From the sequence record NC_048674.1: DNA of 64,000 nucleotides; one strand, written 5' to 3'. The position numbers were made by a program, and so were the translations under genes. Below are positions 5,894 through 44,505 of this stretch, piece by piece. The first letter of the stretch is position 1. The number at the start of each line of letters is the position of its first letter. The notes below the pieces were generated by a model that had not been told where the DNA came from, did no database searches, and saw only the letters and a list, made by a program, of their open reading frames with translations.

Positions 5894-6949
5894 ATGAACA
5901 TAATTTATATCGAACGACAGTTTGCAACTAGACTTAGTTACCGGATGGAATTGTGCACAGATCATTCCCGTGGTGTTGAGGTAAAGTATAATTTCCGTTG
6001 TCCTATATGTGGTGATAGTAAAACTGACTACAGTAAAACCCGTGGGTGGTTATACGAATCAGAGGGTCATGTTCGGTTTGGTTGCTTTAACTGCAACGTT
6101 AATATGAAGCTATCCAACTACCTTTATGATAATGAACCTGAAATGTATAGAGAATTTGCAAAGGAAAAATTTGCAAACAAAGACGATAGTGAATGGTTCG
6201 AAACTAAAAAAACTGTAGAAAAACCAGTTGAACTAATCACAAAGAGTGTGATACCATATTCAACTTGTATAGAGGATCTCCCAGAGAATCATCCCGCCGT
6301 GAAATGGGTTGCGGCTCGTAAAATCCCAAAACATCAATACAAACTGTTCTTCTTTACTGCGGATTGGAAGAAGGTTGCTAATAGTGTTAAGCCAGAAACC
6401 TATCTGTATGATGATAAGAAAGAATATCGATTGGTTATCCCGATCTATAACAAAGATGGAACATATTCATCTTTGCAGGGTCGAGCATTAGATCCAAACG
6501 TTGATAAAAGTAGACGATATTTGACTATCAAGGCTGATGACAAAGCGTCTAAAGTATATGGTATGGAACGTGTGGATCCATCAAAGACAGTTTGGATGTT
6601 GGAAGGACCAATAGACAGCGTGTTTATACCTAATGCATGTGCTATCGTCGGTGGTGTTATGGCTCTTGAAGATGCACCATTCCCTGATAAACGGGTATGG
6701 GTACTTGATAAAGAGGGTCGATCCTTCGACACACTAAAACGGATCGAAAATCTGATCAAAGCCGGTGAAAAGGTTGTCATCTGGGATGAATGTCCGTGGT
6801 CTTCCAAGGATATCAACGATTTCATAAAAAATGATGGCGCTACCATTGATGAAGTGGTACAATATCTGAAAGACCACACATATAGTGGTTTGAGAGCTGA
6901 ACTTGCACTTAGCAAGTGGCGTAAATTTGGACATAAGAGGATTTCGTGA
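5894..6949 (+). CDS. 61: DNA primase gp61
   Basis: Zn finger RCPICGDS...CFNC, QGRAL, TOPRIM EGPIDS, KDIND. Confidence 0.96.
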   Translation: MNIIYIERQFATRLSYRMELCTDHSRGVEVKYNFRCPICGDSKTDYSKTRGWLYESEGHVRFGCFNCNVNMKLSNYLYDNEPEMYREFAKEKFANKDDSEWFETKKTVEKPVELITKSVIPYSTCIEDLPENHPAVKWVAARKIPKHQYKLFFFTADWKKVANSVKPETYLYDDKKEYRLVIPIYNKDGTYSSLQGRALDPNVDKSRRYLTIKADDKASKVYGMERVDPSKTVWMLEGPIDSVFIPNACAIVGGVMALEDAPFPDKRVWVLDKEGRSFDTLKRIENLIKAGEKVVIWDECPWSSKDINDFIKNDGATIDEVVQYLKDHTYSGLRAELALSKWRKFGHKRIS

Positions 6950-23920: not shown

Positions 23921-24835
23921 ATGAACGCATATATCACTATCGGTGCTAGTTCGAGTGGAAAAAGTACTTGGGCTGAAATGATGGTCAAAAAGTCACAAGG
24001 TAAGATGGTTAATATCAACCGTGACGATACTCGTCGTAGTCTGTTCCAGATCAAGAGCTGGAAGGGTTATAACTTCGGGAAAGACCGTGAGGCTCTGGTT
24101 ACTGATGTTAACTGGCGCAAGGTTCTTGCTGCACACGAGGCCGGAAAACAAGTTGTTATCTCTGATACAAACCTGAATGAAAAGTTTCGTAAGGTTATGA
24201 TCGGTCAACTTAAGGAACTGGGGTATAATGTGACGCTGGTTTGGTTTCCTGTTCCGATGGAAGAACTGAAACGCCGTAATTCCACTCGTGGTGGTTGGTC
24301 TGTAAATGATTCCGTTCTGGATCGTATGGTTACCCAGTTTGATGACCAATTCCATCGTTATGAGGTTTATGGTGGAATTGTTGTTGATTATGAACCAAAG
24401 GTAACATATACTCCTGATGAATCTCTTCCGATGGCAGTTATCTTTGATGTTGATGGTACTATAGCAGAAAAGAATGACCGAGATCCGTTTGATTGGGCTC
24501 GTGTCAAGGAAGATACTCCACGCCACACTGTTATCCAATATGCACAACTTCTGAAATACCGTGGTTATGTTATCATCGTTGCTTCTGGTCGTGATGGTGT
24601 ATGTATGAAGGATACTTATGACTGGTGTGTTAAGCATGGTATGCCTATCGACGTTCATATCCAACGTAAACCGGGGGATCAACGTTCGGATAAAGTCATC
24701 AAAGAAGAACTTTTCTGGGAGCATATCGCACCATACTATAACGTAACCCATTGCGTTGATGACCGAGATCAAGTTGTTAAAATGTGGCGCGACCTTGGTA
24801 TCGAATGTTTTCAGGTTCAACCCGGAGACTTTTAG
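23921..24835 (+). CDS. pseT: Polynucleotide 5'-kinase/3'-phosphatase
   Basis: GASSSGKSTW, INRDD.R, SDTNLN; HAD phosphatase FDVDGT, SGR, DDRDQVV.MWR. Confidence 0.96.
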   Translation: MNAYITIGASSSGKSTWAEMMVKKSQGKMVNINRDDTRRSLFQIKSWKGYNFGKDREALVTDVNWRKVLAAHEAGKQVVISDTNLNEKFRKVMIGQLKELGYNVTLVWFPVPMEELKRRNSTRGGWSVNDSVLDRMVTQFDDQFHRYEVYGGIVVDYEPKVTYTPDESLPMAVIFDVDGTIAEKNDRDPFDWARVKEDTPRHTVIQYAQLLKYRGYVIIVASGRDGVCMKDTYDWCVKHGMPIDVHIQRKPGDQRSDKVIKEELFWEHIAPYYNVTHCVDDRDQVVKMWRDLGIECFQVQPGDF

Positions 24836-29287: not shown

Positions 29288-30280
29288 ATGGAAAAATATC
29301 TTGTTGGCGGTGCAGTTCGAGACCAGATTATGGGGAAACCGGTCAAAGACCGTGATTGGGTTGTTGTAGGTTCCACAAAAGAAGAAATGGAAGGTCTTGG
29401 TTATAAGTGTGTTGGTTCCCATTTCCCAGTATACCTTGACGATGATGGTGAAGAGATTGCATTGGCTCGTACAGAGGTATCGACTGGTATTGGGTACAAC
29501 GATTTTCAGGTTGATTTCAACCCAGATGTAACTATCGAAGAAGACCTATACCGTCGAGATTTCACAATGAACGCTATCGCGTATGACCCCATAAACTCTG
29601 TTTATATCGATCCTTATCATGGCATCCAAGATATTGGTAAGAAACAGATTCGTATGGTAAACCCATATGCGTTTCGTGATGACCCTCTTCGTGTTTTCCG
29701 TGCAATTCGTTTTGCTGGACGCTACGGATTCAAGATGGAACCAGAAACGGAAAAAGCAGTAACCGATATGATTGTTGGTGGTGCTTTGGATATGGTATCT
29801 AAAGAGAGGGTATTCGTTGAGTTTATGAAGTGTATGGAAGATATGAGCCATGTTGATGTTTTCATGGGTATACTTCGGGAACTCGATGTGGTAGAATTCT
29901 TTGGGTTCGATCGGGAATTTGTTAAGAACCTCAATAAAGATGGGAAGATCTATACAGACAGCACTATTGCAGACCTTTGCTATTACTGCGAAGATTTTGA
30001 TAGTTATTTGAAGGTACATGAGAAACTGCATCTTACTTCATATCAACGGATGGAAGCGGAGATGTATTACTTTTCTGGGTCTCGGTTCGAAGTTCTCGAT
30101 TATGCAGGTGCAACTCACGACACACCGAAGCTTCACTATGCATTGATGCACCAACCGATTCGTCAAGAACACATCGATTTGTGGCGATCTGTAAGTGCTA
30201 AGGACTTCCCAGAACTCCAAGGAAAAGAACTTGGTAAAGCAATAAAACAGCGTCGTAAGGAATTGATTGATGAAGTATAA
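29288..30280 (+). CDS. cca: tRNA nucleotidyltransferase (CCA-adding enzyme, class II)
   Basis: LVGGAVRD, DRDWVV, EDLYRRDFTMNAIA, DDPLRVFRAIRFA, ERV..E. Confidence 0.95.
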   Translation: MEKYLVGGAVRDQIMGKPVKDRDWVVVGSTKEEMEGLGYKCVGSHFPVYLDDDGEEIALARTEVSTGIGYNDFQVDFNPDVTIEEDLYRRDFTMNAIAYDPINSVYIDPYHGIQDIGKKQIRMVNPYAFRDDPLRVFRAIRFAGRYGFKMEPETEKAVTDMIVGGALDMVSKERVFVEFMKCMEDMSHVDVFMGILRELDVVEFFGFDREFVKNLNKDGKIYTDSTIADLCYYCEDFDSYLKVHEKLHLTSYQRMEAEMYYFSGSRFEVLDYAGATHDTPKLHYALMHQPIRQEHIDLWRSVSAKDFPELQGKELGKAIKQRRKELIDEV

Positions 30281-34417: not shown

Positions 34418-35386
34418 ATGAGTGAATTGATTTTTGAGTGCGTGTTTGGATCTAAGTTGTATGGAACAGACACCCCGGAAAGTGATACTGATTATAAGGG
34501 TGTATTCCTCCCAGAACCACGACAGATCATCATGGGAACAAAAGAGGTTTATCACAGGGATACCGGAGCCAAAGGATCTGCGAACACGGCGGACGACATC
34601 GATAGAGAGTATTTTTCTCTGAAAAAGTTCATTCAAATGGCTTCCAAGGGGGAAACTGCGGCTATTGATATGCTTCACGCACCTATCGATAAAGTGATAA
34701 CAAACTCCGAGATCTTCCAACATTTGAGAAACAACCGGTCTGATTTTTACACAACCAAGATGAAAGCTTATCTTGGATATGTTCGTAAACAGGCAAGTAA
34801 GTATGGGGTTAAAGGGTCTCGTCTCCAAGAGCTTAATTCTGTGTTGTCTTTCATCGAGAATCGTCCTGTAAGCTTGTATGGGGATGACCGATTGGGTGGA
34901 CTTGTATCTGGTATGCCCCAGAGTGAAAACTTGATTATTGGTAAGTTTGTAGACCCCAGCCATCAGACCGTCTATTATTACGAGGTACTTGGTCGCAAAT
35001 ATCTGTTTGGGATCCGTTACTCTGAGTTTGTAGAACAGATTATGAAGATCAAATCTGAATATGGGGCTCGGGCTGAAAAGGCTTCGTCTGGTATCGATTG
35101 GAAGGCGATGAGTCACGCAATTCGTGGTGCAGAACAACTTCTTGAAATTTACACAACTGGTGATCTTCAATTCCCCTTGAAAAATGCGGAATACATCAAG
35201 CTTGTAAAACAAGGTAAGTTGGATTTTTCAAAGGAAGTTCAACCGTACCTTGAGGATGTTATGGACCGAGCGGAGGCAGCGGCGGTAATCGCATCCAAAA
35301 ACGGTATGCCCGATGAAGTAGACCACGATTATTGGAACAATTTCATTTATGAATATTATGTAAACGAGGTAATTGAACGTGGATAA
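34418..35386 (+). CDS. nrdC.11: Nucleotidyltransferase, T4 NrdC.11/RlaP-like
   Basis: FGSKLYGTDTPESDTDYKGVF; DWKAMSHAIR; LKLVKQG. Confidence 0.88.
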   Translation: MSELIFECVFGSKLYGTDTPESDTDYKGVFLPEPRQIIMGTKEVYHRDTGAKGSANTADDIDREYFSLKKFIQMASKGETAAIDMLHAPIDKVITNSEIFQHLRNNRSDFYTTKMKAYLGYVRKQASKYGVKGSRLQELNSVLSFIENRPVSLYGDDRLGGLVSGMPQSENLIIGKFVDPSHQTVYYYEVLGRKYLFGIRYSEFVEQIMKIKSEYGARAEKASSGIDWKAMSHAIRGAEQLLEIYTTGDLQFPLKNAEYIKLVKQGKLDFSKEVQPYLEDVMDRAEAAAVIASKNGMPDEVDHDYWNNFIYEYYVNEVIERG

Positions 35387-37762: not shown

Positions 37763-38595
37763 TAATGAAGATTACTACTTACGCAAAGAAAGTTTTTAAA
37801 AACGAGATCGACGTGTTTGGTAACAAACTTGGTTTTGGAAAATATAGCGGTCTCCGATACCAGTATGGGATGAACAAGTTCATCAATACCCTCCAACGTA
37901 TGGTTCAGATGAACGAGTATTATGAACCAACCTGTCTTAAGGGATTTGATAAACATGTATCAATCAATATCAAGGATCTGGAATCTAATGACTTTTCTCC
38001 TGCTCGATGGGTCATTACATTTCATCAGAAACCGGATAGTGGCGAGAAAATGATTGAACAAATCTGTCGGATGGGTCGCTCTATTGAAAGTATGACCAAA
38101 CAAGAAAATTTCGATATCGGAACAGTTGTTACCGGCGGAAAACTTCAATCCGTATCGTTCGTTTTCTACAAGTGAGGTGTTGTATGAAATTCATTATTAG
38201 GGTAAAATATAGAACTGGTGATAGTTTTAATACATACGACGATGAACGAATTCTGGCACCTGTTTGGTTTGACAACGATGATGCTATGAAGGCACTTGTT
38301 GAGATTTACGAGTTCAATGAGTTCTATAACGCATACAACAACGAACGTTGGACACCAGCAAAACAGGAAATGGTTAAGGATCTGGCTTCTCGTCGTCCAT
38401 GGGCCAAGGATGTAGAAGATCCTTTCGATTTCTTCTCATCCATGAATATTCATCACTCTGATGGTAGGATCAAAATTGATATGGATTTCGTAACGGGATA
38501 TTTCGAACACTTTGAAAGTGCAGAAATTGAGGTTAAGATTGACAAGACCACAGATTATGGATACAGTGGTGGTTATGATGATCTGGTAAAGAAGT

Positions 38596-39045
38596 ATGGC
38601 AATCATTGACATCTATTCCGGGAGCCGGGATTGGATTGAACGTGAGTTGTCAAACTTCACAGAACACCCATTTACATTCGACGGTGTGTATTATCGGACG
38701 ATTGAGGCTTTCCTACAAAGCCTCAAATATGAAAACCCCCCAGACATAAACAATTTGAGGGGTCATGAAGTTTATAAGGTTTGTCATTCTAATAGGGGGT
38801 GGCAGAAAGACCTTACTATGTGGTATAAAGGAAAGCCTGTAAACCGTCTCAGTGAAGCGTATAGCAATCTTTTGTATAACGCATACCTTTCAATGGCCGA
38901 ACAGAACAAATCATTCCTAGAGGCTCTGGTACACTCAAAACCGCATATATTGGCCCATACTATGGGTTGTAAGGATCCACACATCACAATTCTGACGGAA
39001 AAAGAGTTTTGTGACATTTTGAACGAGATTAGAGAACAACTTTGA
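38596..39045 (+). CDS. 30.3: NADAR-family ADP-ribosylhydrolase (T4 gp30.3-like)
   Basis: LSNF..HPFTFDGV....IEAFLQSLK; AY....QNKSF..AL; TILTE.EF..IL matches recalled gp30.3. Confidence 0.85.
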   Translation: MAIIDIYSGSRDWIERELSNFTEHPFTFDGVYYRTIEAFLQSLKYENPPDINNLRGHEVYKVCHSNRGWQKDLTMWYKGKPVNRLSEAYSNLLYNAYLSMAEQNKSFLEALVHSKPHILAHTMGCKDPHITILTEKEFCDILNEIREQL

Positions 39046-39440
39046 CCCCACATTCTGTTTTGTTCCGTTACCTTGACGGACTCCCCGTATCCGACGACGA
39101 AGTTAAAATTCTTGTTGACTATGCGAAAGAAAAATTTAATAATAAACCGTGTATTTTGTATAGGTGGTCGTCTAAGAATCCACACGATGATCACACGATG
39201 AATAGCTTTTCTTCTTGTGCTAAAACGGCTCGGTCTGTTGGGTCATACTTCCAGAAGACAGACGATGGACACACATATGAAGTAGAAGCAGTTCCAATCC
39301 TTTCAATCGATAACATCAGGTTCATGATCCACAAGTTCTGTGATTATGAACCGTACAGAAAGATTCTACTTAGGATCTTGAAACGGGAAGGGGAATATCT
39401 CGTCCTAAACTCCGACATAATTTCAATGAGGATTATCTAA
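39042..39440 (+). CDS. Putative minimal ADP-ribosyltransferase (R-S-E clade)
   Basis: ILYRW, NSFSS and REGEYLV appear in the canonical order. TTG start overlaps the NADAR stop; stop overlaps the Prs-like ATG. Confidence 0.5.
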   Translation: MTPHSVLFRYLDGLPVSDDEVKILVDYAKEKFNNKPCILYRWSSKNPHDDHTMNSFSSCAKTARSVGSYFQKTDDGHTYEVEAVPILSIDNIRFMIHKFCDYEPYRKILLRILKREGEYLVLNSDIISMRII

Positions 39441-40237
39441 TGTATAAATTATTTGTTACTTATAAAGACTTCAATATCAATCATGCAATTGTAGATTTTA
39501 AACAGTTTGCTGGTGGGGAATGGAACGTCAAACTTCCAAAAGATGTTATTGAATATGGGGCTTATGAGGCAGATACTGTTCGTGTTGATGCAAGTATCCA
39601 CGATGGCGATATCATGAAACTGGCGATCCTTACGGATGCACTTCACCGATTCTTCGGGACTGGTGTGCGATACGTTTTGGACCTATCCTATCTCCCTTAT
39701 GCTCGACAAGACCGAGTTATGGCAGTAGGTGAAAGCCTGTCTTTGCGTGTCTTTTGTGATTTTATTAACTCAATGAAATATGATTTGGTTTGTCTCACCG
39801 ATCCACATTCCGATGTAGCAACCGCATTGATCAATAACGTATTTGTTAACAAACAGTGTTGTTGGGGTTCTCAAGGGATTTCCCGTCGTAATTATGATGC
39901 TATTGTATCCCCAGATGCAGGTGCTCTGAAAAAGATTTATCCTCAAGCTCAAAGTGCGGGACTACCTGTAATTGAAGCCATGAAGACTCGTGACATCAAC
40001 ACTGGTGAAGTTAGCGAACCTCGTTTCAATGCTGACGTCAAAGGTAAGCGGTTGTTGATCGTAGACGATATTTGTGATGGTGGTCGTTCTTTCCTAAATC
40101 TTGGTAAAGTATTGAAAGAGTCTGGTGCGGTTCGAGTGGACCTGTTTGTTACCCATGGAATTTTTTCTTACAACGCCAAAGAAAACCTTGCACAGTACAT
40201 CGACAACGTATATACTCGTTTCGACTGGACAAAATAA
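39440..40237 (+). CDS. Ribose-phosphate pyrophosphokinase-like protein, probably Adps (ADPR-PP synthetase) of NARP1
   Basis: FAGGE, YLPYARQDRV, DPHS, SPDAGA.K, IVDDICDGGRSF, VTHG. Confidence 0.88.
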   Translation: MYKLFVTYKDFNINHAIVDFKQFAGGEWNVKLPKDVIEYGAYEADTVRVDASIHDGDIMKLAILTDALHRFFGTGVRYVLDLSYLPYARQDRVMAVGESLSLRVFCDFINSMKYDLVCLTDPHSDVATALINNVFVNKQCCWGSQGISRRNYDAIVSPDAGALKKIYPQAQSAGLPVIEAMKTRDINTGEVSEPRFNADVKGKRLLIVDDICDGGRSFLNLGKVLKESGAVRVDLFVTHGIFSYNAKENLAQYIDNVYTRFDWTK

Positions 40238-41577
40238 GGAACTAAACATGATGAGTATCGAAACTATGACCCAAATCATTAACTCCCGTATCGATGAACT
40301 TCTGGCTAACCAATCTGTTCAGGAAATGTTGATGCGAGAAAAGGCGAATGGGATGAACGAAGAAGGGATCAAGAATCTTGTTCATAATCTGGCTATCGGT
40401 ACTCTCTGTTTTGGAGAAAAGAAATGATTAATTCAATTACATATGTATTGAAGAAAGAAGACTGTCACGAATCATATCAACCTATCACTATCAAGATCAT
40501 TGGTGAAATTCCAATGGACGAAGTGAAAAAGGTACACCGGATTCGGATGTTTGACCGATATCATGACTGGTTCCGTTCGGAAGAAAATGATATCGAAATC
40601 ATTGATACTGGTCGTGATACTATCGGTGATTATAAATTCATCGAGTATGACCTTAAAGATGATAAAGTTTTGACAGTAGTTTTCTCTAAACTGGTAAACC
40701 ATGATCATATGGATGAATTTATTGGACGTATCATTCATAAACAACGTCTTGGTAGTTGTCGAGCAAAACGGGCTGGGTTTATTTGTGGTGAACGAAAGTT
40801 TGGGAAAAGTGAATCTCTTCGCATTGACTGTAATGGGAACAATTTTTGATGAATAAATGGCAAACACCCGGACGGGTTATGACAAAAATAATCGACCTTA
40901 CGCTCGAAAATATTGGATATAATATATCCGATTTGGTGGTACATTCTTACAAAGATGAAGGTGATTGCATTCTTGTAAACTTAGAGTTTAAGGAAGGTGG
41001 TGATCTGGTTGTTCAACGAACAAGGTTGGTGTTATGAGAATTTATTTTATTGGCAACATTCCTTATGTAGTGGAAAAAAGTGACTTTTCTGATTGTACCG
41101 ACCACCGCCACAGGTTCACTATGTCTAGCAATTATGTAGTAGACCATATCAAAGGTGTTTTTGTTTTCATCAAAAATCGCTATTCGTCAGAAAAAATCGT
41201 TTTGTTTTCCTTCGATAGTGTGGTAGAGTATATTCAACAGTTCGAAGAAGAACATGTTAGTAAATTCACCAGAATGGTAGGATTTGAAGATATTCCAAAA
41301 ATCATCAATGAACACCGCAAAAAATTTGCTTTTAAACCTAACGTGGTATCAATATACTACAAATCAGATAGACATCGGGTCGAATTTATGAGAGACCACC
41401 GAAATATTGGTTGGCTTACTGCAATTGATAATTTTGTGATGGATGGTCAGGTTTGTAAAATTTGTGATGATGGCTCTGTAAATTTTGTTGATGTTAAAAC
41501 AGAAACAACGTATTCTATGAGAAAAGATACGTTAGAAAAATACTTTACCCAAATTATGTAATAAGGAAAATGAGAAA

Positions 41578-43104
41578 ATGAAATATCCGCATATGTCCGT
41601 AGACTTCTACAAATGGGGTCACATCGATCAATACATCAACGGTACTGAACTTGTAATCTCCAACCTAACCCCTCGTTCTGACCGTCTGGCTAACACCATT
41701 CACGGCAACGGTAAGATGGTATTCTTCGGTCTGCAATACACCCTGCAATACATGGTGGAGCAATGGGATCAGAACTTCTTTAGCAAGTCTAAAGAGAAAG
41801 TAGTTAAGCGGTTCTCTCGTCGTGTCAAGAACTCCATCGGTAAAGACCACGGCGATACCATGATTAAAGCTCTTGGTGACCTTCATGACCTTGGTTATCT
41901 GCCAATTGAAGTGCGAGCAATCGAAGAGGGTAACTGGATTAACATGGGTATCCCTGCTTTCGTAGTGAGTAACACCAAGAAAGAGTTCTTCTGGCTGGTT
42001 AACTACCTCGAAACCTTCCTGAGTGCGATGGTATGGCCTATGAGCAACTCCGCTATGGTATCTGCTCAATACCGCAAGACCTCCAATAAGTGGGCTCCGA
42101 TGACTGGTGCAGACGACTTTTGGACTCTGATTGCTAACCACTGTTTCGCCGCTCGGGGTCATCGTGGTATCGAAGATGCTACCATCTCTGGTATGGGTCA
42201 ACTTCTGTTCAGTGCTGGTACTGACACCGGTTGGGCTATCGATTACATCGAAGACTATTACGGTGCTAATAGCGACGAGGAACTGATTGGTTGTTCTGTT
42301 AACGCCTTCGAACATGCTACCGCAACCCAACGTATCGCTTACTTCCGTGGTCTTGGTTTTGAACATGCAGAACGTGAAAGCCTCCGCCGTCTGTTCACAG
42401 AAACTTATCCGACCGGGATCCTGAGTTACGTTGCGGATAGTGAAGATTATTATCGTCTGTTGTCGGTTGACCTTCTGGCACTGAAAGACGAAATCGAAGC
42501 CCGTCAACCGGATTCAAACGGTCTGTGTAAGTTTGTAGTTCGCCCAGACAGTTCCCCCAAGACTCCTTACGAGGTGATCATGGGTGACCCGGAAGCAGAA
42601 GATGAGAACGAACGTAAAGGGTCTCTGCAAATCCTGTGGGATATTTTTGGTGGTACTGTGAACGAGAAGGGTTTCCGTGTTCTGAATCCGAAAGTTGGTA
42701 TCATCTACGGTGAAGCGATTGACGGTGAACTGCAAGAAAAGATCTATGCTGGTATGGCTGCTGCTGGCTGGTGTGTTTCCAACGTACTGATGGGTACTGG
42801 TAGTTGGGGTTTCCTCAAGAATGCTTCTCGCGATAGCTTCTCTATTGCAATCAAGGGTACTCACTCCATCGTTGATGGAATTGATATCTCCATGCAGAAG
42901 AACCCGAAAACTGCGTTGAACAGTAAGAAGTCCGCTCGGGGTCGTCTGCGGGTTGAGAAGGTTGATGGTGATTATGTTCTTTTCGAGAACCAAACCGCTG
43001 ATGAGTTCAACCAAGGCGAATTGAAACTTGCTTTCCGTGACGGTAAGATTGTTAACTTCCAAATCTGGAAAGACATCCAAGCTCGTGCGCTGGCTGGTCT
43101 GTAA
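41578..43104 (+). CDS. Nicotinamide phosphoribosyltransferase-like protein, probably Namat of NARP1
   Basis: DFYKWGH, SNLTPRS, FFGLQY, VNAFEHA, SYVADS, VVRPDS, IIYGE, K.PKT...KKSARG. Confidence 0.93.
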   Translation: MKYPHMSVDFYKWGHIDQYINGTELVISNLTPRSDRLANTIHGNGKMVFFGLQYTLQYMVEQWDQNFFSKSKEKVVKRFSRRVKNSIGKDHGDTMIKALGDLHDLGYLPIEVRAIEEGNWINMGIPAFVVSNTKKEFFWLVNYLETFLSAMVWPMSNSAMVSAQYRKTSNKWAPMTGADDFWTLIANHCFAARGHRGIEDATISGMGQLLFSAGTDTGWAIDYIEDYYGANSDEELIGCSVNAFEHATATQRIAYFRGLGFEHAERESLRRLFTETYPTGILSYVADSEDYYRLLSVDLLALKDEIEARQPDSNGLCKFVVRPDSSPKTPYEVIMGDPEAEDENERKGSLQILWDIFGGTVNEKGFRVLNPKVGIIYGEAIDGELQEKIYAGMAAAGWCVSNVLMGTGSWGFLKNASRDSFSIAIKGTHSIVDGIDISMQKNPKTALNSKKSARGRLRVEKVDGDYVLFENQTADEFNQGELKLAFRDGKIVNFQIWKDIQARALAGL

Positions 43105-43163
43105 AAATAGAAAGGGGTTGCGTATTGCAACCCCAACACAACTAAACTAAAAAGGTTAATACA

Positions 43164-43451
43164 ATGGCTAAGATGAATAAAGAACAAACTGCAAAATTTA
43201 ATTCACTGTTTGAAGATACCCTGAATTGGGGCGATGGTAGTACTTGTACTGGGTTGTTTGATTGTCTGGGTGGTCCAAACCTCGGTTATCTGGCGACTGA
43301 GATAGACGGGGACGATTTGCAGATTTTTGAATTTACTGGTTCTTACTGGGAATTCTTGGGTTCTATGCCTATTAACTCAAAGACAAAAGCGAAGTTCAAA
43401 AAGATTGTTCTCCATCTGATGGATAAAGATTTCGATACTCTGGAATTTTAA
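43164..43451 (+). CDS. Hypothetical protein
   Basis: AAGG SD; ends at a hairpin. Confidence 0.55.
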   Translation: MAKMNKEQTAKFNSLFEDTLNWGDGSTCTGLFDCLGGPNLGYLATEIDGDDLQIFEFTGSYWEFLGSMPINSKTKAKFKKIVLHLMDKDFDTLEF

Positions 43452-43524: not shown

Positions 43525-44505
43525 ATGCTTGGTACTGTATGTATGACTGGTATTTTCGATAAGTCTAAATCAACTTTTACCGCTCATAAAGATACAAAAA
43601 TGGGTACGGTTACCAGAAAAAGTATGATGCAGATATGTGGGATTGACGACCCGTCACTCCTTACATTGGATGTGGTATCTAAAAATTCTATTAAACTAAA
43701 GGCAAAGCTGATGCCTAAAGTTAAACAAAATCTAAATGCTTTGTACAACCAACTGGTTTTTGTGTCTGGTATGCCAACTGAATGTCATGCTCTGCGGATT
43801 AGTTCAGATCTACTTCCGTTGTTTGACCACCCAGTGTTAGGGTCTCTTTACGATGTGGATATGTTATCCGCTGTGGACATGTTGCTAAATCGTTGCAAAA
43901 AAGTAATAGATTCAAACGGTATCGTGATATCTACTCACCCGGACCAGTTTGTTATCATCAATTCTGTCGGTGAAGATACCAGAAATCAATCTTTTGCTAC
44001 CCTCATGTATCACAAATATTTTATGGAACGGTTGACTACATCAGATAAATCTTGTATTAATATTCATCTTGAAGGCAACTTAGATCATCTCCCAGAACTT
44101 GATAATGGTCAATATTCGGATCTTATTCCTTGGCTCTCATTTGAGAATAGCGATAAAAACGGTAAGATCTTCACGGGGGACACTCAAAATACGTTGCTTA
44201 TTTGTGAAAAATATGGTATAAAAATGTTGTATGACTGTCATCACCATCTTGTTATGACCGGTGAATTTTTGGATGTTGATTCATCTACGTTTGAACGAAT
44301 CCTTTCCACTTGGAGAAACCAAAAACCGTTTTTCCACGTTTCACAAAGCCGTGAAGTAGACAAAGTATCCCGCGCACATAGCGATTATATTGATGATCCT
44401 ATGGTCATCCAACAAGCTAAAATCCTGTCTGGTTTGGGTTGTCTAGAAGTTGAAGCGAAAGCAAAAACATCTGCTGTACTGGATTTATTTTCAAAAATTG
44501 GTTGA
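43525..44505 (+). CDS. uvsE: UV-damage endonuclease (UVDE/UvsE family)
   Basis: RISSDLLP, STHPDQF..INS, NIH, EN.DK, YDCHHH, HVSQS, AHSDYI, EVEAKAK. Confidence 0.9.
   Translation: MLGTVCMTGIFDKSKSTFTAHKDTKMGTVTRKSMMQICGIDDPSLLTLDVVSKNSIKLKAKLMPKVKQNLNALYNQLVFVSGMPTECHALRISSDLLPLFDHPVLGSLYDVDMLSAVDMLLNRCKKVIDSNGIVISTHPDQFVIINSVGEDTRNQSFATLMYHKYFMERLTTSDKSCINIHLEGNLDHLPELDNGQYSDLIPWLSFENSDKNGKIFTGDTQNTLLICEKYGIKMLYDCHHHLVMTGEFLDVDSSTFERILSTWRNQKPFFHVSQSREVDKVSRAHSDYIDDPMVIQQAKILSGLGCLEVEAKAKTSAVLDLFSKIG

What the first reader, a model, noticed from the sequence alone, without database searches (positions are those of the whole stretch)
38596..43104. Possible phage ADP-ribose write/erase/recycle module: NADAR, minimal ART-like ORF, Adps ... 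Namat
Seen: three stop/start-overlapping ORFs. They are gp30.3-like NADAR (38596-39045), a 132-aa ORF with ILYRW / NSFSS / REGEYLV in the R-S-E order of ADP-ribosyltransferases (39042-39440), and a Prs-like gene (39440-40237); a Nampt-like gene follows 1.3 kb later. Established: phage Prs-like plus Nampt-like pairs form NARP1 (Adps/Namat), which rebuilds NAD+ from ADP-ribose against Thoeris/DSR/SIR2-type defences; T4 gp30.3 is a NADAR that removes ADP-ribose. Inference: adding a writer, with the eraser releasing the ADPR that Adps consumes, would be a closed ADP-ribosylation cycle not part of the NARP1 description as I know it.
Basis: partly seen in the sequence, partly recalled or inferred. 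Interest (0 to 1): 0.85.

Follow-up and report, generated by a model that had tools for sequence, protein, structure and literature searches.

The report
Phage NAD gene cluster with candidate mini-ART
In an Aeromonas T4-like phage, a small unannotated gene that may encode an unusually small ADP-ribose-attaching enzyme sits between two already known anti-defence functions, an ADP-ribose remover and an NAD+-rebuilding pathway, but nothing found here shows that the three work as one closed cycle.

Summary
The window is Aeromonas phage AS-zj (Ceceduovirus).

Two of the three functions are already known:
- **NADAR:** 38596-39045 is a gp30.3/AdfN-type NADAR with its catalytic residues intact.
- **NARP1:** 39440-40237 and 41578-43104 are the Adps/Namat pair. 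This phage's two genes are already listed in the NARP1 paper's supplementary tables.

The 132-aa ORF (39042-39440, phrog_18982) is a real gene under purifying selection (dN/dS 0.11).
- **For an ART:** its Y-R, S-x-S and E-x-E residues are invariant even in two ~30%-identical remote homologues, which carry canonical STS and EKE/EQE. A profile comparison with T4 ModA/ModB-type ARTs aligns all three motifs in register (P about 0.007; 2/300 and 0/300 shuffles).
- **Unresolved:** Pfam and PDB sequence searches find nothing. The AlphaFold models are poor, so the fold test is inconclusive.

The closed write/erase/recycle cycle is not supported:
- The ORF is absent from the related phage Aswh_1, where NADAR directly abuts Adps.
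- It is frameshifted in the phage 65 reference.
- Its remote homologues have no NADAR, Adps or Namat nearby.

Best reading: a co-transcribed cluster of independent NAD+/ADP-ribose conflict genes that includes a candidate minimal Mod-like ART.

The parts
38172..38609 (+). Upstream 145-aa ORF of unknown function (phrog_10176). Its end overlaps the NADAR start by 14 nt.
   Evidence: It is conserved at 43-45% identity in phages 65 and avDM6.
38596..39045 (+). gp30.3/AdfN-type NADAR, a predicted ADP-ribosyl glycohydrolase acting on ADP-ribosylated guanine in DNA.
   Evidence: Pfam PF08010 at 6.7e-33. It is 39% identical to T4 gp30.3, with E36, K43 and the phage-type His123 invariant and the C-terminal helix present. 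The residues come from bioRxiv 10.1101/2024.07.11.602962 and PMC11125620.
39042..39440 (+). ORF132: a 132-aa protein of family phrog_18982 and a candidate minimal ModA/ModB-like R-S-ExE ADP-ribosyltransferase. It starts at a TTG that is translationally coupled to the NADAR stop.
   Evidence: dN/dS is 0.11 against phage CC2. Family alignment. hhalign against the Mod family: score 23.3, P=0.0069, 123 columns, with shuffle controls of 2/300 and 0/300. Fold prediction was inconclusive.
39159..39167 (+). Codons for Y40-R41-W42, the candidate catalytic Arg motif.
   Evidence: Y40 and R41 are invariant in all three lineages. R41 pairs with ModB R73, whose R73A mutant is inactive (PMC10468400).
39204..39212 (+). 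Codons for S55-F56-S57, the candidate S-x-S (STS-type) motif.
   Evidence: S55 and S57 are invariant. The remote homologues read STS. The motif pairs with the Mod family V-x-S-F-S...A motif.
39387..39395 (+). Codons for E116-G117-E118, the candidate ExE motif.
   Evidence: E116 and E118 are invariant, with EKE and EQE in the remote homologues. The motif pairs with ModB E171-x-E173.
39440..40237 (+). Adps, the ADP-ribose pyrophosphokinase that is the first enzyme of NARP1.
   Evidence: Pfam and PHROG hits. The PP loop reads DDICDGGRSF, against DDMIDTGGT in canonical PRPS (PMC13586617). The gene is listed as MF448340_00121 in the NARP1 paper's Prs/Adps supplementary table, with a 'Yes' flag.
40248..41561 (+). 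Four small ORFs of unknown function between Adps and Namat: 40248-40427, 40424-40849, 40846-41037 and 41034-41561.
   Evidence: phrog_17159, 8320, 1873 and 24164. This segment varies between relatives.
41578..43104 (+). Namat, the nicotinamide ADP-ribose transferase that is the second enzyme of NARP1.
   Evidence: The best PDB match is SPbetaL1 Namat 9W5X/9W5W at 6.6e-96, against about 1e-37 for human Nampt (PMC12774641). The gene is listed as MF448340_00126, 'Adps-associated'. The SCH motif GSWGFLKNASRD only partly fits the Namat signature.

Best explanation
The region is a co-transcribed, partly translationally coupled stretch of early-type genes of Aeromonas phage AS-zj. Its genes all deal in NAD+ and ADP-ribose but act independently.

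1. **NADAR (AdfN-type).** It removes ADP-ribose that DarT1-like host toxins put on guanines of phage DNA.
2. **ORF132.** It is most likely a very small, divergent relative of the T4 ModA/ModB R-S-ExE ADP-ribosyltransferases. It would use NAD+ to ADP-ribosylate host targets during takeover, with arginines of proteins the default expectation for an ExE enzyme.
3. **Adps and Namat.** They are the known NARP1 pathway, which rebuilds NAD+ from the ADP-ribose and nicotinamide left by host NADase defences.

Shown here: the gene identities, the overlaps, the synteny, purifying selection on ORF132, motif invariance, and a weak but register-correct profile match.

Inferred: that ORF132 is catalytically active, what it targets, and that the genes act independently.
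For: - **Identity of the window:** 100% identical to AS-zj.
- **NADAR:** PF08010 at 6.7e-33 with the catalytic E36/K43/His conserved.
- **NARP1:** both genes of this phage are in the NARP1 paper's tables. Namat matches SPbetaL1 Namat at 6.6e-96. The Adps PP loop is of the Adps type.
- **ORF132 is a real gene:** dN/dS 0.11. The trio keeps the same overlaps in CC2, avDM6 and two metagenomic relatives.
- **ORF132 motifs:** Y40-R41, S55/S57 and E116/E118 are invariant in P0006 and P0007, which are 29-30% identical by BLASTP, independently hit phrog_18982, and carry STS and EKE/EQE.
- **hhalign against a 12-member Mod family:** score 23.3, P=0.0069, 123 collinear columns pairing R-R73, SxS-SxS, A-A and ExE-ExE.
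- **Controls:** 2/300 and 0/300 column shuffles reach that score. Unrelated controls score 10.7 and 13.5.
- **Mod-HMM against P0004:** 10.1 bits, p=0.0003 by shuffling.
- **Signal grows with profile diversity:** P went from 0.16 to 0.007.
- **Short Mod members exist:** 148-181 aa.
- **No detectable ModA/ModB in this group:** Aeromonas is missing from the ten genera listed for the Mod tblastn, the smallest of which has 11 records, although the AS-zj group alone has about 20 records.
Against: - No Pfam hit for any family member even at E<=10.
- No ART among PDB sequence hits.
- PHROGs keeps phrog_18982 as a family of unknown function.
- hhalign probability is only 5.5%. With the narrower Mod alignment the match was not significant.
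- P0007 alone does not align in register.
- The AlphaFold2 models are poor (pLDDT 54 and 61, with the core at residues 40-81 below 50). Foldseek finds no ART or anything else.
- The ExE region is predicted to lie at a helix end rather than on a strand.
- The R-to-S spacing is 14 residues, against 26 in the Mod family, and only 14 residues follow ExE.
- Several nested comparisons were tried, so P about 0.007 is somewhat optimistic.
- Independence of the genes is argued from distribution, not from experiment.
Confidence: 0.5

Rival explanations
1. ORF132 is not an ADP-ribosyltransferase. It is a small early protein of another kind, for example a binder or inhibitor of a host or defence protein. 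The conserved R, S-x-S and E-x-E residues would then serve folding or binding, and the resemblance to ModA/ModB would be fortuitous.
For: - No hit to any ART model in Pfam or among PDB sequences.
- Foldseek finds nothing.
- AF2 puts E116 at the end of a confidently predicted helix.
- The profile match is weak (probability 5.5%) and was not significant with the first Mod alignment.
- At 132 aa the protein is shorter than every catalytically complete Mod-family member aligned here (167-221 aa).
- It evolves faster than its neighbours: 61% identity against 70-82%.
Against: - Five of the eight polar invariant residues across three lineages form the R / S-x-S / E-x-E series in the canonical order. 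In the remote members they become more canonical, not less.
- The flanking features also match the Mod family: P-x-x-L-Y-R, S-F-S-x5-A and L-x-L-x-x-E-x-E followed by hydrophobic residues.
- Shuffle controls give 2/300 and 0/300.
- The Mod family itself finds no ART in the PDB by sequence, so negative sequence searches carry little weight.
Confidence: 0.3
2. NADAR and ORF132 form a toxin-antitoxin-like writer/eraser pair, like DarT1-NADAR or YbiA-YarT. ORF132 would ADP-ribosylate guanines in nucleic acid, and the upstream, translationally coupled NADAR would keep the damage off the phage's own DNA.
For: - The gene order, NADAR first and then a small ART candidate with a 4-nt overlap, is the same as in the myxobacterial YbiA-YarT pair, where YarT is a 114-aa ART (PMC11125620).
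- The junction is conserved in every Emmerichvirinae-type member examined that carries the ORF.
- The NADAR of phages that carry ORF132 is 82-87% identical to the window's, against 58% in Aswh_1, which lacks it. Prs and Nampt are equally distant in all three.
- Some R-S-E ARTs (the pierisin/ScARP group) do target guanine, and NADARs reverse the ScARP product (PMC11125620).
Against: - Aswh_1 keeps the NADAR without ORF132.
- T4 and its relatives have AdfN without any ORF132 homologue.
- The remote homologues P0006 and P0007 have no NADAR in the DNA available.
- The best profile match is to the Mod family. Its characterised member ModB is arginine-specific (PMC10468400).
- AdfN already has a sufficient and demonstrated role against DarTG1.
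Confidence: 0.12
3. One reading: a closed cycle in which ORF132 writes ADP-ribose, the NADAR erases it, and the released ADP-ribose is the feedstock that Adps and Namat turn back into NAD+.
For: All four activities are plausible from the sequences. Three of the genes are translationally coupled and all lie in one terminator-free stretch. Iyer et al. already noted NADAR genes next to NAD+ salvage genes in phages (PMC9503650).
Against: - Co-occurrence fails outside one clade, and even inside it.
- In the NARP1 paper, Namat lies in the immediate vicinity of 97% of Adps-clade genes, and the pathway is reported in 859 phage genomes. Prs-like homologues occur in 1,439 phage records, whereas the ORF132 family has only six sequence clusters in 5.8 billion proteins.
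- NARP1's demonstrated substrate is the bulk ADP-ribose made by host NADases. ADP-ribose released from adducts would be minor by comparison (inference).
- The NADAR linkage specificity (guanine) and the expected ExE-ART linkage (arginine) do not match.
Confidence: 0.06

Closest known systems
T4 ModA/ModB (Mod family of R-S-ExE ADP-ribosyltransferases, Pfam PF26816)
   Same: Both are early genes of T4-like phages. The motifs P-x-x-L-Y-R, h-x-S-F-S-x5-A and L-x-L-x-x-E-x-E-h-h occur in the same order, with a helical segment between the S motif and ExE. The profile alignment is collinear over 123 columns.
   Different: ORF132 has 132 aa, against about 200. The R-to-S spacing is 14 residues, against 26. 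W or F follows the Arg where Mod has Gly. Only 14 residues follow ExE. There is no Pfam hit, the similarity is only P about 0.007, and the genomic position differs (between NADAR and Adps rather than next to srd).
YbiA-YarT and DarT1-NADAR toxin-antitoxin pairs (PMC11125620; PMC11543638)
   Same: A NADAR gene lies immediately upstream of a very small ART (YarT has 114 aa).
   Different: YarT belongs to the H-Y-E/HYD1 clade, not the R-S-E clade. Those pairs are bacterial, whereas this is a lytic phage. The pairing here is not kept in Aswh_1 or in the remote homologues, and toxicity and rescue are untested.
T4 gp30.3 = AdfN (bioRxiv 10.1101/2024.07.11.602962)
   Same: Same Pfam family, 39% identity, catalytic E36/K43/His conserved, full-length C-terminal helix.
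   Different: The host and genomic neighbours differ. Activity against Aeromonas DarT-like systems has not been tested.
NARP1 of phages Bas63 and SPbetaL1 (bioRxiv 10.1101/2024.02.11.579819; PMC12774641; PMC13586617)
   Same: An Adps-clade Prs-like gene plus a Namat-clade gene. This phage is listed in the paper's own tables.
   Different: The two genes are 1.3 kb apart with four small ORFs between them, not adjacent. The Namat SCH motif has Lys instead of an aromatic at adenine-stacking position 7, plus one extra residue.

Membership tests
R-S-ExE ADP-ribosyltransferases, Mod (ModA/ModB) family | Catalytic Arg in an aromatic-Arg motif (ModB R73) | tested here: met
   Y40-R41 is invariant in all seven family sequences and pairs with ModB R73 in hhalign. 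The R73A mutant is inactive (PMC10468400). The next residue is W or F rather than the Mod-family Gly.
R-S-ExE ADP-ribosyltransferases, Mod (ModA/ModB) family | S-x-S/T motif followed by a conserved Ala | tested here: met
   S55 and S57 are invariant, with STS in P0006 and P0007, and pair with Mod S99-F-S/T...A107.
R-S-ExE ADP-ribosyltransferases, Mod (ModA/ModB) family | E-x-E motif followed by hydrophobic residues | tested here: met
   E116 and E118 are invariant (EGE, EKE, EQE) and pair with Mod E171-x-E173.
R-S-ExE ADP-ribosyltransferases, Mod (ModA/ModB) family | Statistically significant sequence similarity to the family model | tested here: inconclusive
   No Pfam hit at E<=10. hhalign gives P=0.0069 and probability 5.5%, with shuffles at 2/300 and 0/300. 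HMMER shuffle p-values are 0.0003 to 0.19 per member. The narrower profile was not significant.
R-S-ExE ADP-ribosyltransferases, Mod (ModA/ModB) family | ART fold (split beta-sheet core around an NAD+ cleft) | tested here: inconclusive
   Two AlphaFold2 runs gave pLDDT 53.9 and 61.2, with the core at residues 40-81 below 50. Foldseek against the PDB and BFVD finds only the protein itself.
R-S-ExE ADP-ribosyltransferases, Mod (ModA/ModB) family | NAD+-dependent ADP-ribosyl transfer | not testable with these tools
   This needs biochemistry.
NADAR superfamily, phage gp30.3/AdfN subfamily | Match to PF08010 above the gathering score | tested here: met
   113.9 bits against a cut-off of 36, E=6.7e-33, covering the full profile.
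NADAR superfamily, phage gp30.3/AdfN subfamily | Catalytic E36 and K43, the phage-type His of the last strand, and an intact C-terminal helix | tested here: met
   E36, K43 and H123 (T4 numbering) are invariant, and the alignment runs to the C-terminus. The residues come from bioRxiv 10.1101/2024.07.11.602962 and PMC11125620.
NADAR superfamily, phage gp30.3/AdfN subfamily | Guanine-ADP-ribose glycohydrolase activity and counter-defence against DarTG1 | not testable with these tools
   Shown for T4 AdfN only, in the literature.
NARP1 (Adps + Namat) | Prs-like protein of the Adps clade with the remodelled PP loop | tested here: met
   The PP loop DDICDGGRSF maps to D212-D213-I214-C215-D216...S220-F221 and K185 of the reference Adps, against DDMIDTGGT in PRPS. 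The gene is listed with a 'Yes' flag in the paper's Prs/Adps table.
NARP1 (Adps + Namat) | Namat-clade gene in the vicinity of adps | tested here: met
   It lies 1,340 bp downstream on the same strand. It matches SPbetaL1 Namat at 6.6e-96, against 1e-37 for human Nampt. It is listed as 'Adps-associated'.
NARP1 (Adps + Namat) | Namat SCH signature G-S-X-phi-X-phi-X-phi-T-R-D with aromatic X at positions 3 and 7 | tested here: inconclusive
   The window reads GSWGFLKNASRD. Position 3 is W and position 5 is F, but position 7 is K, and there is one extra residue before RD.
NARP1 (Adps + Namat) | ADPR to ADPR-PP to NAD+ chemistry and counter-defence | not testable with these tools
   Shown for the Bas63, SPbetaL1 and Fado homologues only, in the literature.
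NADAR-ART toxin-antitoxin pairs (DarT1-NADAR, YbiA-YarT) | Conserved genetic linkage of the ART with its NADAR | tested here: not met
   The two are linked, with a 4-nt overlap, in every Aeromonas-type phage or contig examined that carries the ORF. But the NADAR occurs alone in Aswh_1, and P0006 and P0007 have no NADAR nearby.
NADAR-ART toxin-antitoxin pairs (DarT1-NADAR, YbiA-YarT) | Toxicity of the ART and rescue by the cognate NADAR | not testable with these tools
   This needs expression tests in a laboratory strain.

The most novel reading that the evidence does not exclude
ORF132 would be the smallest known R-S-ExE ADP-ribosyltransferase and would work with the upstream NADAR as a phage-borne writer/eraser pair. 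The ART would ADP-ribosylate guanines in host nucleic acid (or another N-glycosidic target) to shut the host down. The NADAR would keep the phage's own DNA clean, and NARP1 next door would replace the NAD+ spent. This would be a self/non-self discrimination module built from a toxin-antitoxin logic inside a lytic phage.
Probability: 0.08. Interest if true: 0.8.

Novelty: new variant of a known kind. Interest (0 to 1): 0.45.

Why it matters
If ORF132 is active, it would define a new, very small branch of the ModA/ModB-type ARTs: 132 aa, with only six sequence clusters in 5.8 billion proteins. That would set a lower size limit for the R-S-ExE fold. It would also give T4-like Aeromonas phages, which have no detectable ModA/ModB, a host-modifying enzyme.

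Its position between an anti-DarT eraser and NARP1 also marks this stretch as an NAD+/ADP-ribose conflict island. The neighbouring unknown ORFs there are worth screening for counter-defence activity.

The NADAR and NARP1 parts add nothing new.

Tried and rejected
1. **Sequence searches.** ORF132 and its family profile were searched against Pfam, PDB sequences and PHROGs. Nothing turned up beyond phrog_18982. The PDB hits were protein-A tag artefacts.
2. **Structure prediction.** Two AlphaFold2 runs (5- and 7-sequence alignments) were both too poor to use. Foldseek against the PDB and BFVD returned nothing usable.
3. **Searching for more family members.** The exhaustive HMM search, the word-index search, IMG/VR and the metagenome scan added only P0006 and P0007. 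They also gave one spurious tape-measure hit (L012) and one 32-residue fragment (L013).
4. **First comparisons with ARTs.** Single ModB, single ModA, Alt and the 7-member Mod alignment were not significant: P 0.05-0.36, 25/200 and 34/150 shuffles, HMMER p 0.01-0.34. Only the 12-member alignment gave P about 0.007.
5. **NMNAT candidate.** The annotated 'nucleotidyltransferase' at 34418-35386 was checked as a possible NMNAT, which would have pointed to NARP2. It is an RlaP RNA-repair enzyme.
6. **Promoter and terminator scan.** It found nothing above the shuffle expectation inside the cluster.
7. **Iyer et al. 2022 supplements.** None are held as text, so I could not check whether they list this ORF as an ART.

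Full report
**What the window is.** Bases 38100-43200 are 100% identical to Aeromonas phage AS-zj (NC_048673; Straboviridae, Emmerichvirinae, Ceceduovirus). About 20 related Aeromonas phage records share the region. All genes in the area lie on the + strand. No terminator-like site above chance lies between about 36650 and 43110, so one long transcription unit is plausible. That rests only on a consensus scan.

**Observation check.** The four ORFs are at the stated coordinates.
- The 132-aa ORF starts at a TTG that overlaps the NADAR TGA stop (cTTGA).
- Its TAA stop overlaps the ATG of the Prs-like gene (TAATG).
- The NADAR start lies inside the end of the upstream ORF 38172-38609.
- The TTG start and both overlaps recur in CC2, avDM6 and two metagenomic relatives.
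- The motifs ILYRW, NSFSS and REGEYLV are residues 38-42, 54-58 and 115-121.

The motif order in a single sequence is weak evidence. It appears in 1.4-5.4% of composition-matched shuffles. The loose form occurs in 8 of 73 long + strand ORFs of the window.

**The NADAR.** ORF 38596-39045 matches Pfam PF08010 (Phage_30_3) at 6.7e-33 over the whole profile. It is 39% identical to T4 gp30.3. T4 gp30.3 has been renamed AdfN. [quoted passage not shown] E36, K43 and the histidine that marks phage NADARs (PMC11125620) are invariant in the window protein. The C-terminal helix that RB69 lacks is present. This is an ordinary member of a known family.

**NARP1.**
- *Domains.* The Prs-like ORF carries the same Pfam domains that first flagged NARP1 (PF14572), and the Nampt-like ORF carries PF04095 and PF18127.
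- *Adps PP loop.* It reads DDICDGGRSF. This maps onto D212-D213-I214-C215-D216...S220-F221 and K185 of the structurally characterised Adps. A canonical PRPS reads DDMIDTGGT.
- *Namat.* The Nampt-like protein matches the SPbetaL1 Namat structures 9W5X/9W5W at 6.6e-96, against about 1e-37 for human Nampt.
- *Already catalogued.* The supplementary tables of the NARP1 paper list AS-zj genes MF448340_00121 (Prs/Adps table, flag 'Yes') and MF448340_00126 (Namat, 'Adps-associated').

Two deviations are worth recording. The genes are 1,340 bp apart with four small ORFs between them. The Namat SCH motif (GSWGFLKNASRD) has Lys rather than an aromatic at adenine-stacking position 7.

**ORF132 is a real gene in a very small family.**
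- dN/dS against CC2 is 0.11, comparable with its neighbours at 0.04 and 0.12.
- It belongs to phrog_18982 (unknown function) and has no Pfam hit.
- tblastn finds it only in 19 Aeromonas phage records.
- A word-index search of 5.8 billion proteins and an exhaustive HMM search of 1.84 billion representatives add only four close relatives and two remote ones: P0006 (197 aa) and P0007 (147 aa). Both remote ones independently match phrog_18982 (1.7e-6 and 1e-5).
- IMG/VR and metagenome scans add nothing usable.

**Is ORF132 an ART? Evidence for.**
- In the seven-sequence alignment, 23 columns are invariant. Among the polar ones are Y40-R41, S55, S57, E116 and E118. The remote members read YRW/YRF, STS, and EKE/EQE, which is closer to the textbook R-S-ExE pattern than the Aeromonas copies are.
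- I built a Mod-family alignment from T4 ModA and ModB and their relatives. Its conserved blocks are P-x-x-L-Y-R-G, V-x-S-F-S-x5-A-x-x-F and N-L-x-L-V-x-D-E-x-E-x-M-I-P. They resemble the ORF132 blocks beyond the catalytic letters.
- With seven Mod sequences, hhalign gave a collinear alignment that was not significant (P=0.16; 25/200 shuffles).
- With twelve more diverse sequences, the score rose to 23.3 (P=0.0069) over 123 columns. The alignment pairs R41 with ModB R73, SxS with SxS, and ExE with ExE.
- Column shuffles reached that score in 2 of 300 runs (Mod side) and 0 of 300 runs (ORF132 side). Unrelated controls scored 10.7 and 13.5.
- A Mod HMM scores P0004 at 10.1 bits (0 of 3000 shuffles reached it). 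The other members get p = 0.02-0.19, and their local alignments mostly fall on the S motif or the ExE motif in register.
- ModB R73 is experimentally required, and ModB makes arginine N-glycosides (PMC10468400).

**Is ORF132 an ART? Evidence against or missing.**
- The hhalign probability is only 5.5%.
- P0007 alone does not align in register.
- Several nested comparisons were tried.
- The spacing is unusual: 14 residues from R to S, and only 14 residues after ExE.
- The fold test failed. pLDDT was 53.9 and 61.2, with the putative beta core below 50, and Foldseek found no match.
- Negative sequence searches count for little here. The Mod family itself finds no ART in the PDB by sequence.

I put the ART reading at roughly 55-65%.

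**Is there a closed cycle? The linkage data say no.**
- In Aeromonas phage Aswh_1 (Ishigurovirus), the NADAR is followed 17 bp later by the Prs-like gene, and no ORF132 homologue exists in the locus.
- In the phage 65 reference, one extra base just after the Arg codon frameshifts the gene. Phages 65.2 and avDM6 are intact.
- P0007 sits in a 132-kb phage contig next to a phosphoesterase. P0006 sits in a 4.5-kb contig. Neither has a NADAR, Prs-like or Nampt-like neighbour in the DNA available.
- Prs-like homologues occur in 1,439 phage records, and NARP1 was reported in 859 phage genomes. AdfN is widespread in T-even phages. All of these lack ORF132.
- The demonstrated NADAR substrate is guanine-linked ADP-ribose, whereas ModB, an R-S-ExE enzyme, makes arginine-linked products.
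- By inference, adduct-derived ADP-ribose would be a minor source next to the bulk ADP-ribose made by host NADases.

One observation leaves room for a tighter NADAR-ORF132 relation. The NADAR of phages that carry ORF132 is 82-87% identical to the window's, against 58% in Aswh_1. Prs and Nampt are equally distant in all three.

**Comparison with what is known.**
- NADAR genes next to NAD+ salvage genes, and NADAR genes expressed with ARTs in T4-like phages, were already noted by Iyer et al. (PMC9503650).
- In T4 itself, alt lies 2.8 kb from 30.3.
- A NADAR directly upstream of a very small ART is the architecture of the YbiA-YarT toxin-antitoxin pair. There YarT is a 114-aa H-Y-E enzyme (PMC11125620).

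So the two flanking functions are already known. The only new element is ORF132 as a candidate minimal Mod-like ART, in a new position.

**Verdict.** Novelty: a new variant of a known kind, if ORF132 is active. Interest: moderate, 0.45.

Noticed in passing
L002 about 6586-6590 (Aeromonas phage 65, NC_015251): The phage 65 reference has one extra G right after the Arg codon of the YRW motif, compared with avDM6. This frameshifts its ORF132 homologue, which is annotated as a 106-aa protein from an internal start. Phage 65.2 and avDM6 are intact. It could be a sequencing error or a real inactivation.
   Followed up: partly
P0008 (177-aa protein from the representative search): This protein has three tandem repeats of about 55 aa that resemble ORF132 residues about 33-80 (FHRWPTSSPMPFDRELNSESNT...). 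It matched the family profile only at E=5e-4. Its origin and meaning are unknown.
   Followed up: no
L003 8304-9275; L006 7013-7975; L022 7020-8003. The corresponding window position is about 41034-41561.: Several relatives carry a gene of about 325 aa on the minus strand just upstream of Namat. In L022 it has CapR/DUF723 domains (homing-endonuclease-like). avDM6 annotates it as a putative endonuclease, and Aswh_1 as hypothetical. The window instead has a 175-aa + strand ORF (phrog_24164). The Adps-Namat spacer is a variable insertion site.
   Followed up: partly
window 41578-43104, residues 408-419: The Namat selectivity-clamp helix reads GSWGFLKNASRD. It has Lys instead of the adenine-stacking aromatic at position 7 of the published Namat signature, plus one extra residue. 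Substrate preference (ADPR-PP against PRPP) might differ from SPbetaL1 Namat.
   Followed up: partly
window 38596-39045 compared with L002, L003 and L006: The NADAR is 82-87% identical in phages 65 and avDM6, which carry ORF132, but only 58% identical in Aswh_1, which lacks it. Prs (70-72%) and Nampt (77-78%) are equally distant in all three. This suggests mosaic exchange of the NADAR-ORF132 segment.
   Followed up: partly
window 34418-35386, 29288-30280 and 23921-24835: An RNA-repair-type gene set lies upstream: an RlaP-family nucleotidyltransferase (8.1e-17), a PolyA_pol/CCA-adding-type enzyme, and an annotated polynucleotide kinase.
   Followed up: partly
window 43525-44505: A UvdE-type UV-damage endonuclease gene (PF03851, 3.8e-31) lies 420 bp downstream of Namat, after one small ORF. 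The position is conserved in relatives.
   Followed up: no
L017 398-844 (Erwinia phage IT22) and L019 296-904 (phage CC31): Some annotated ModA proteins are truncated. The IT22 modA is 148 aa and ends before the ExE motif. The CC31 ModA ends 13 residues after ExE. Natural Mod-family variants lacking C-terminal strands therefore exist.
   Followed up: no
L004 7365-7874: The remote ORF132 homologue P0007 lies 127 bp downstream of a calcineurin-like phosphoesterase (Metallophos_2, phrog_547). Whether this enzyme acts on ADP-ribose derivatives was not examined.
   Followed up: no
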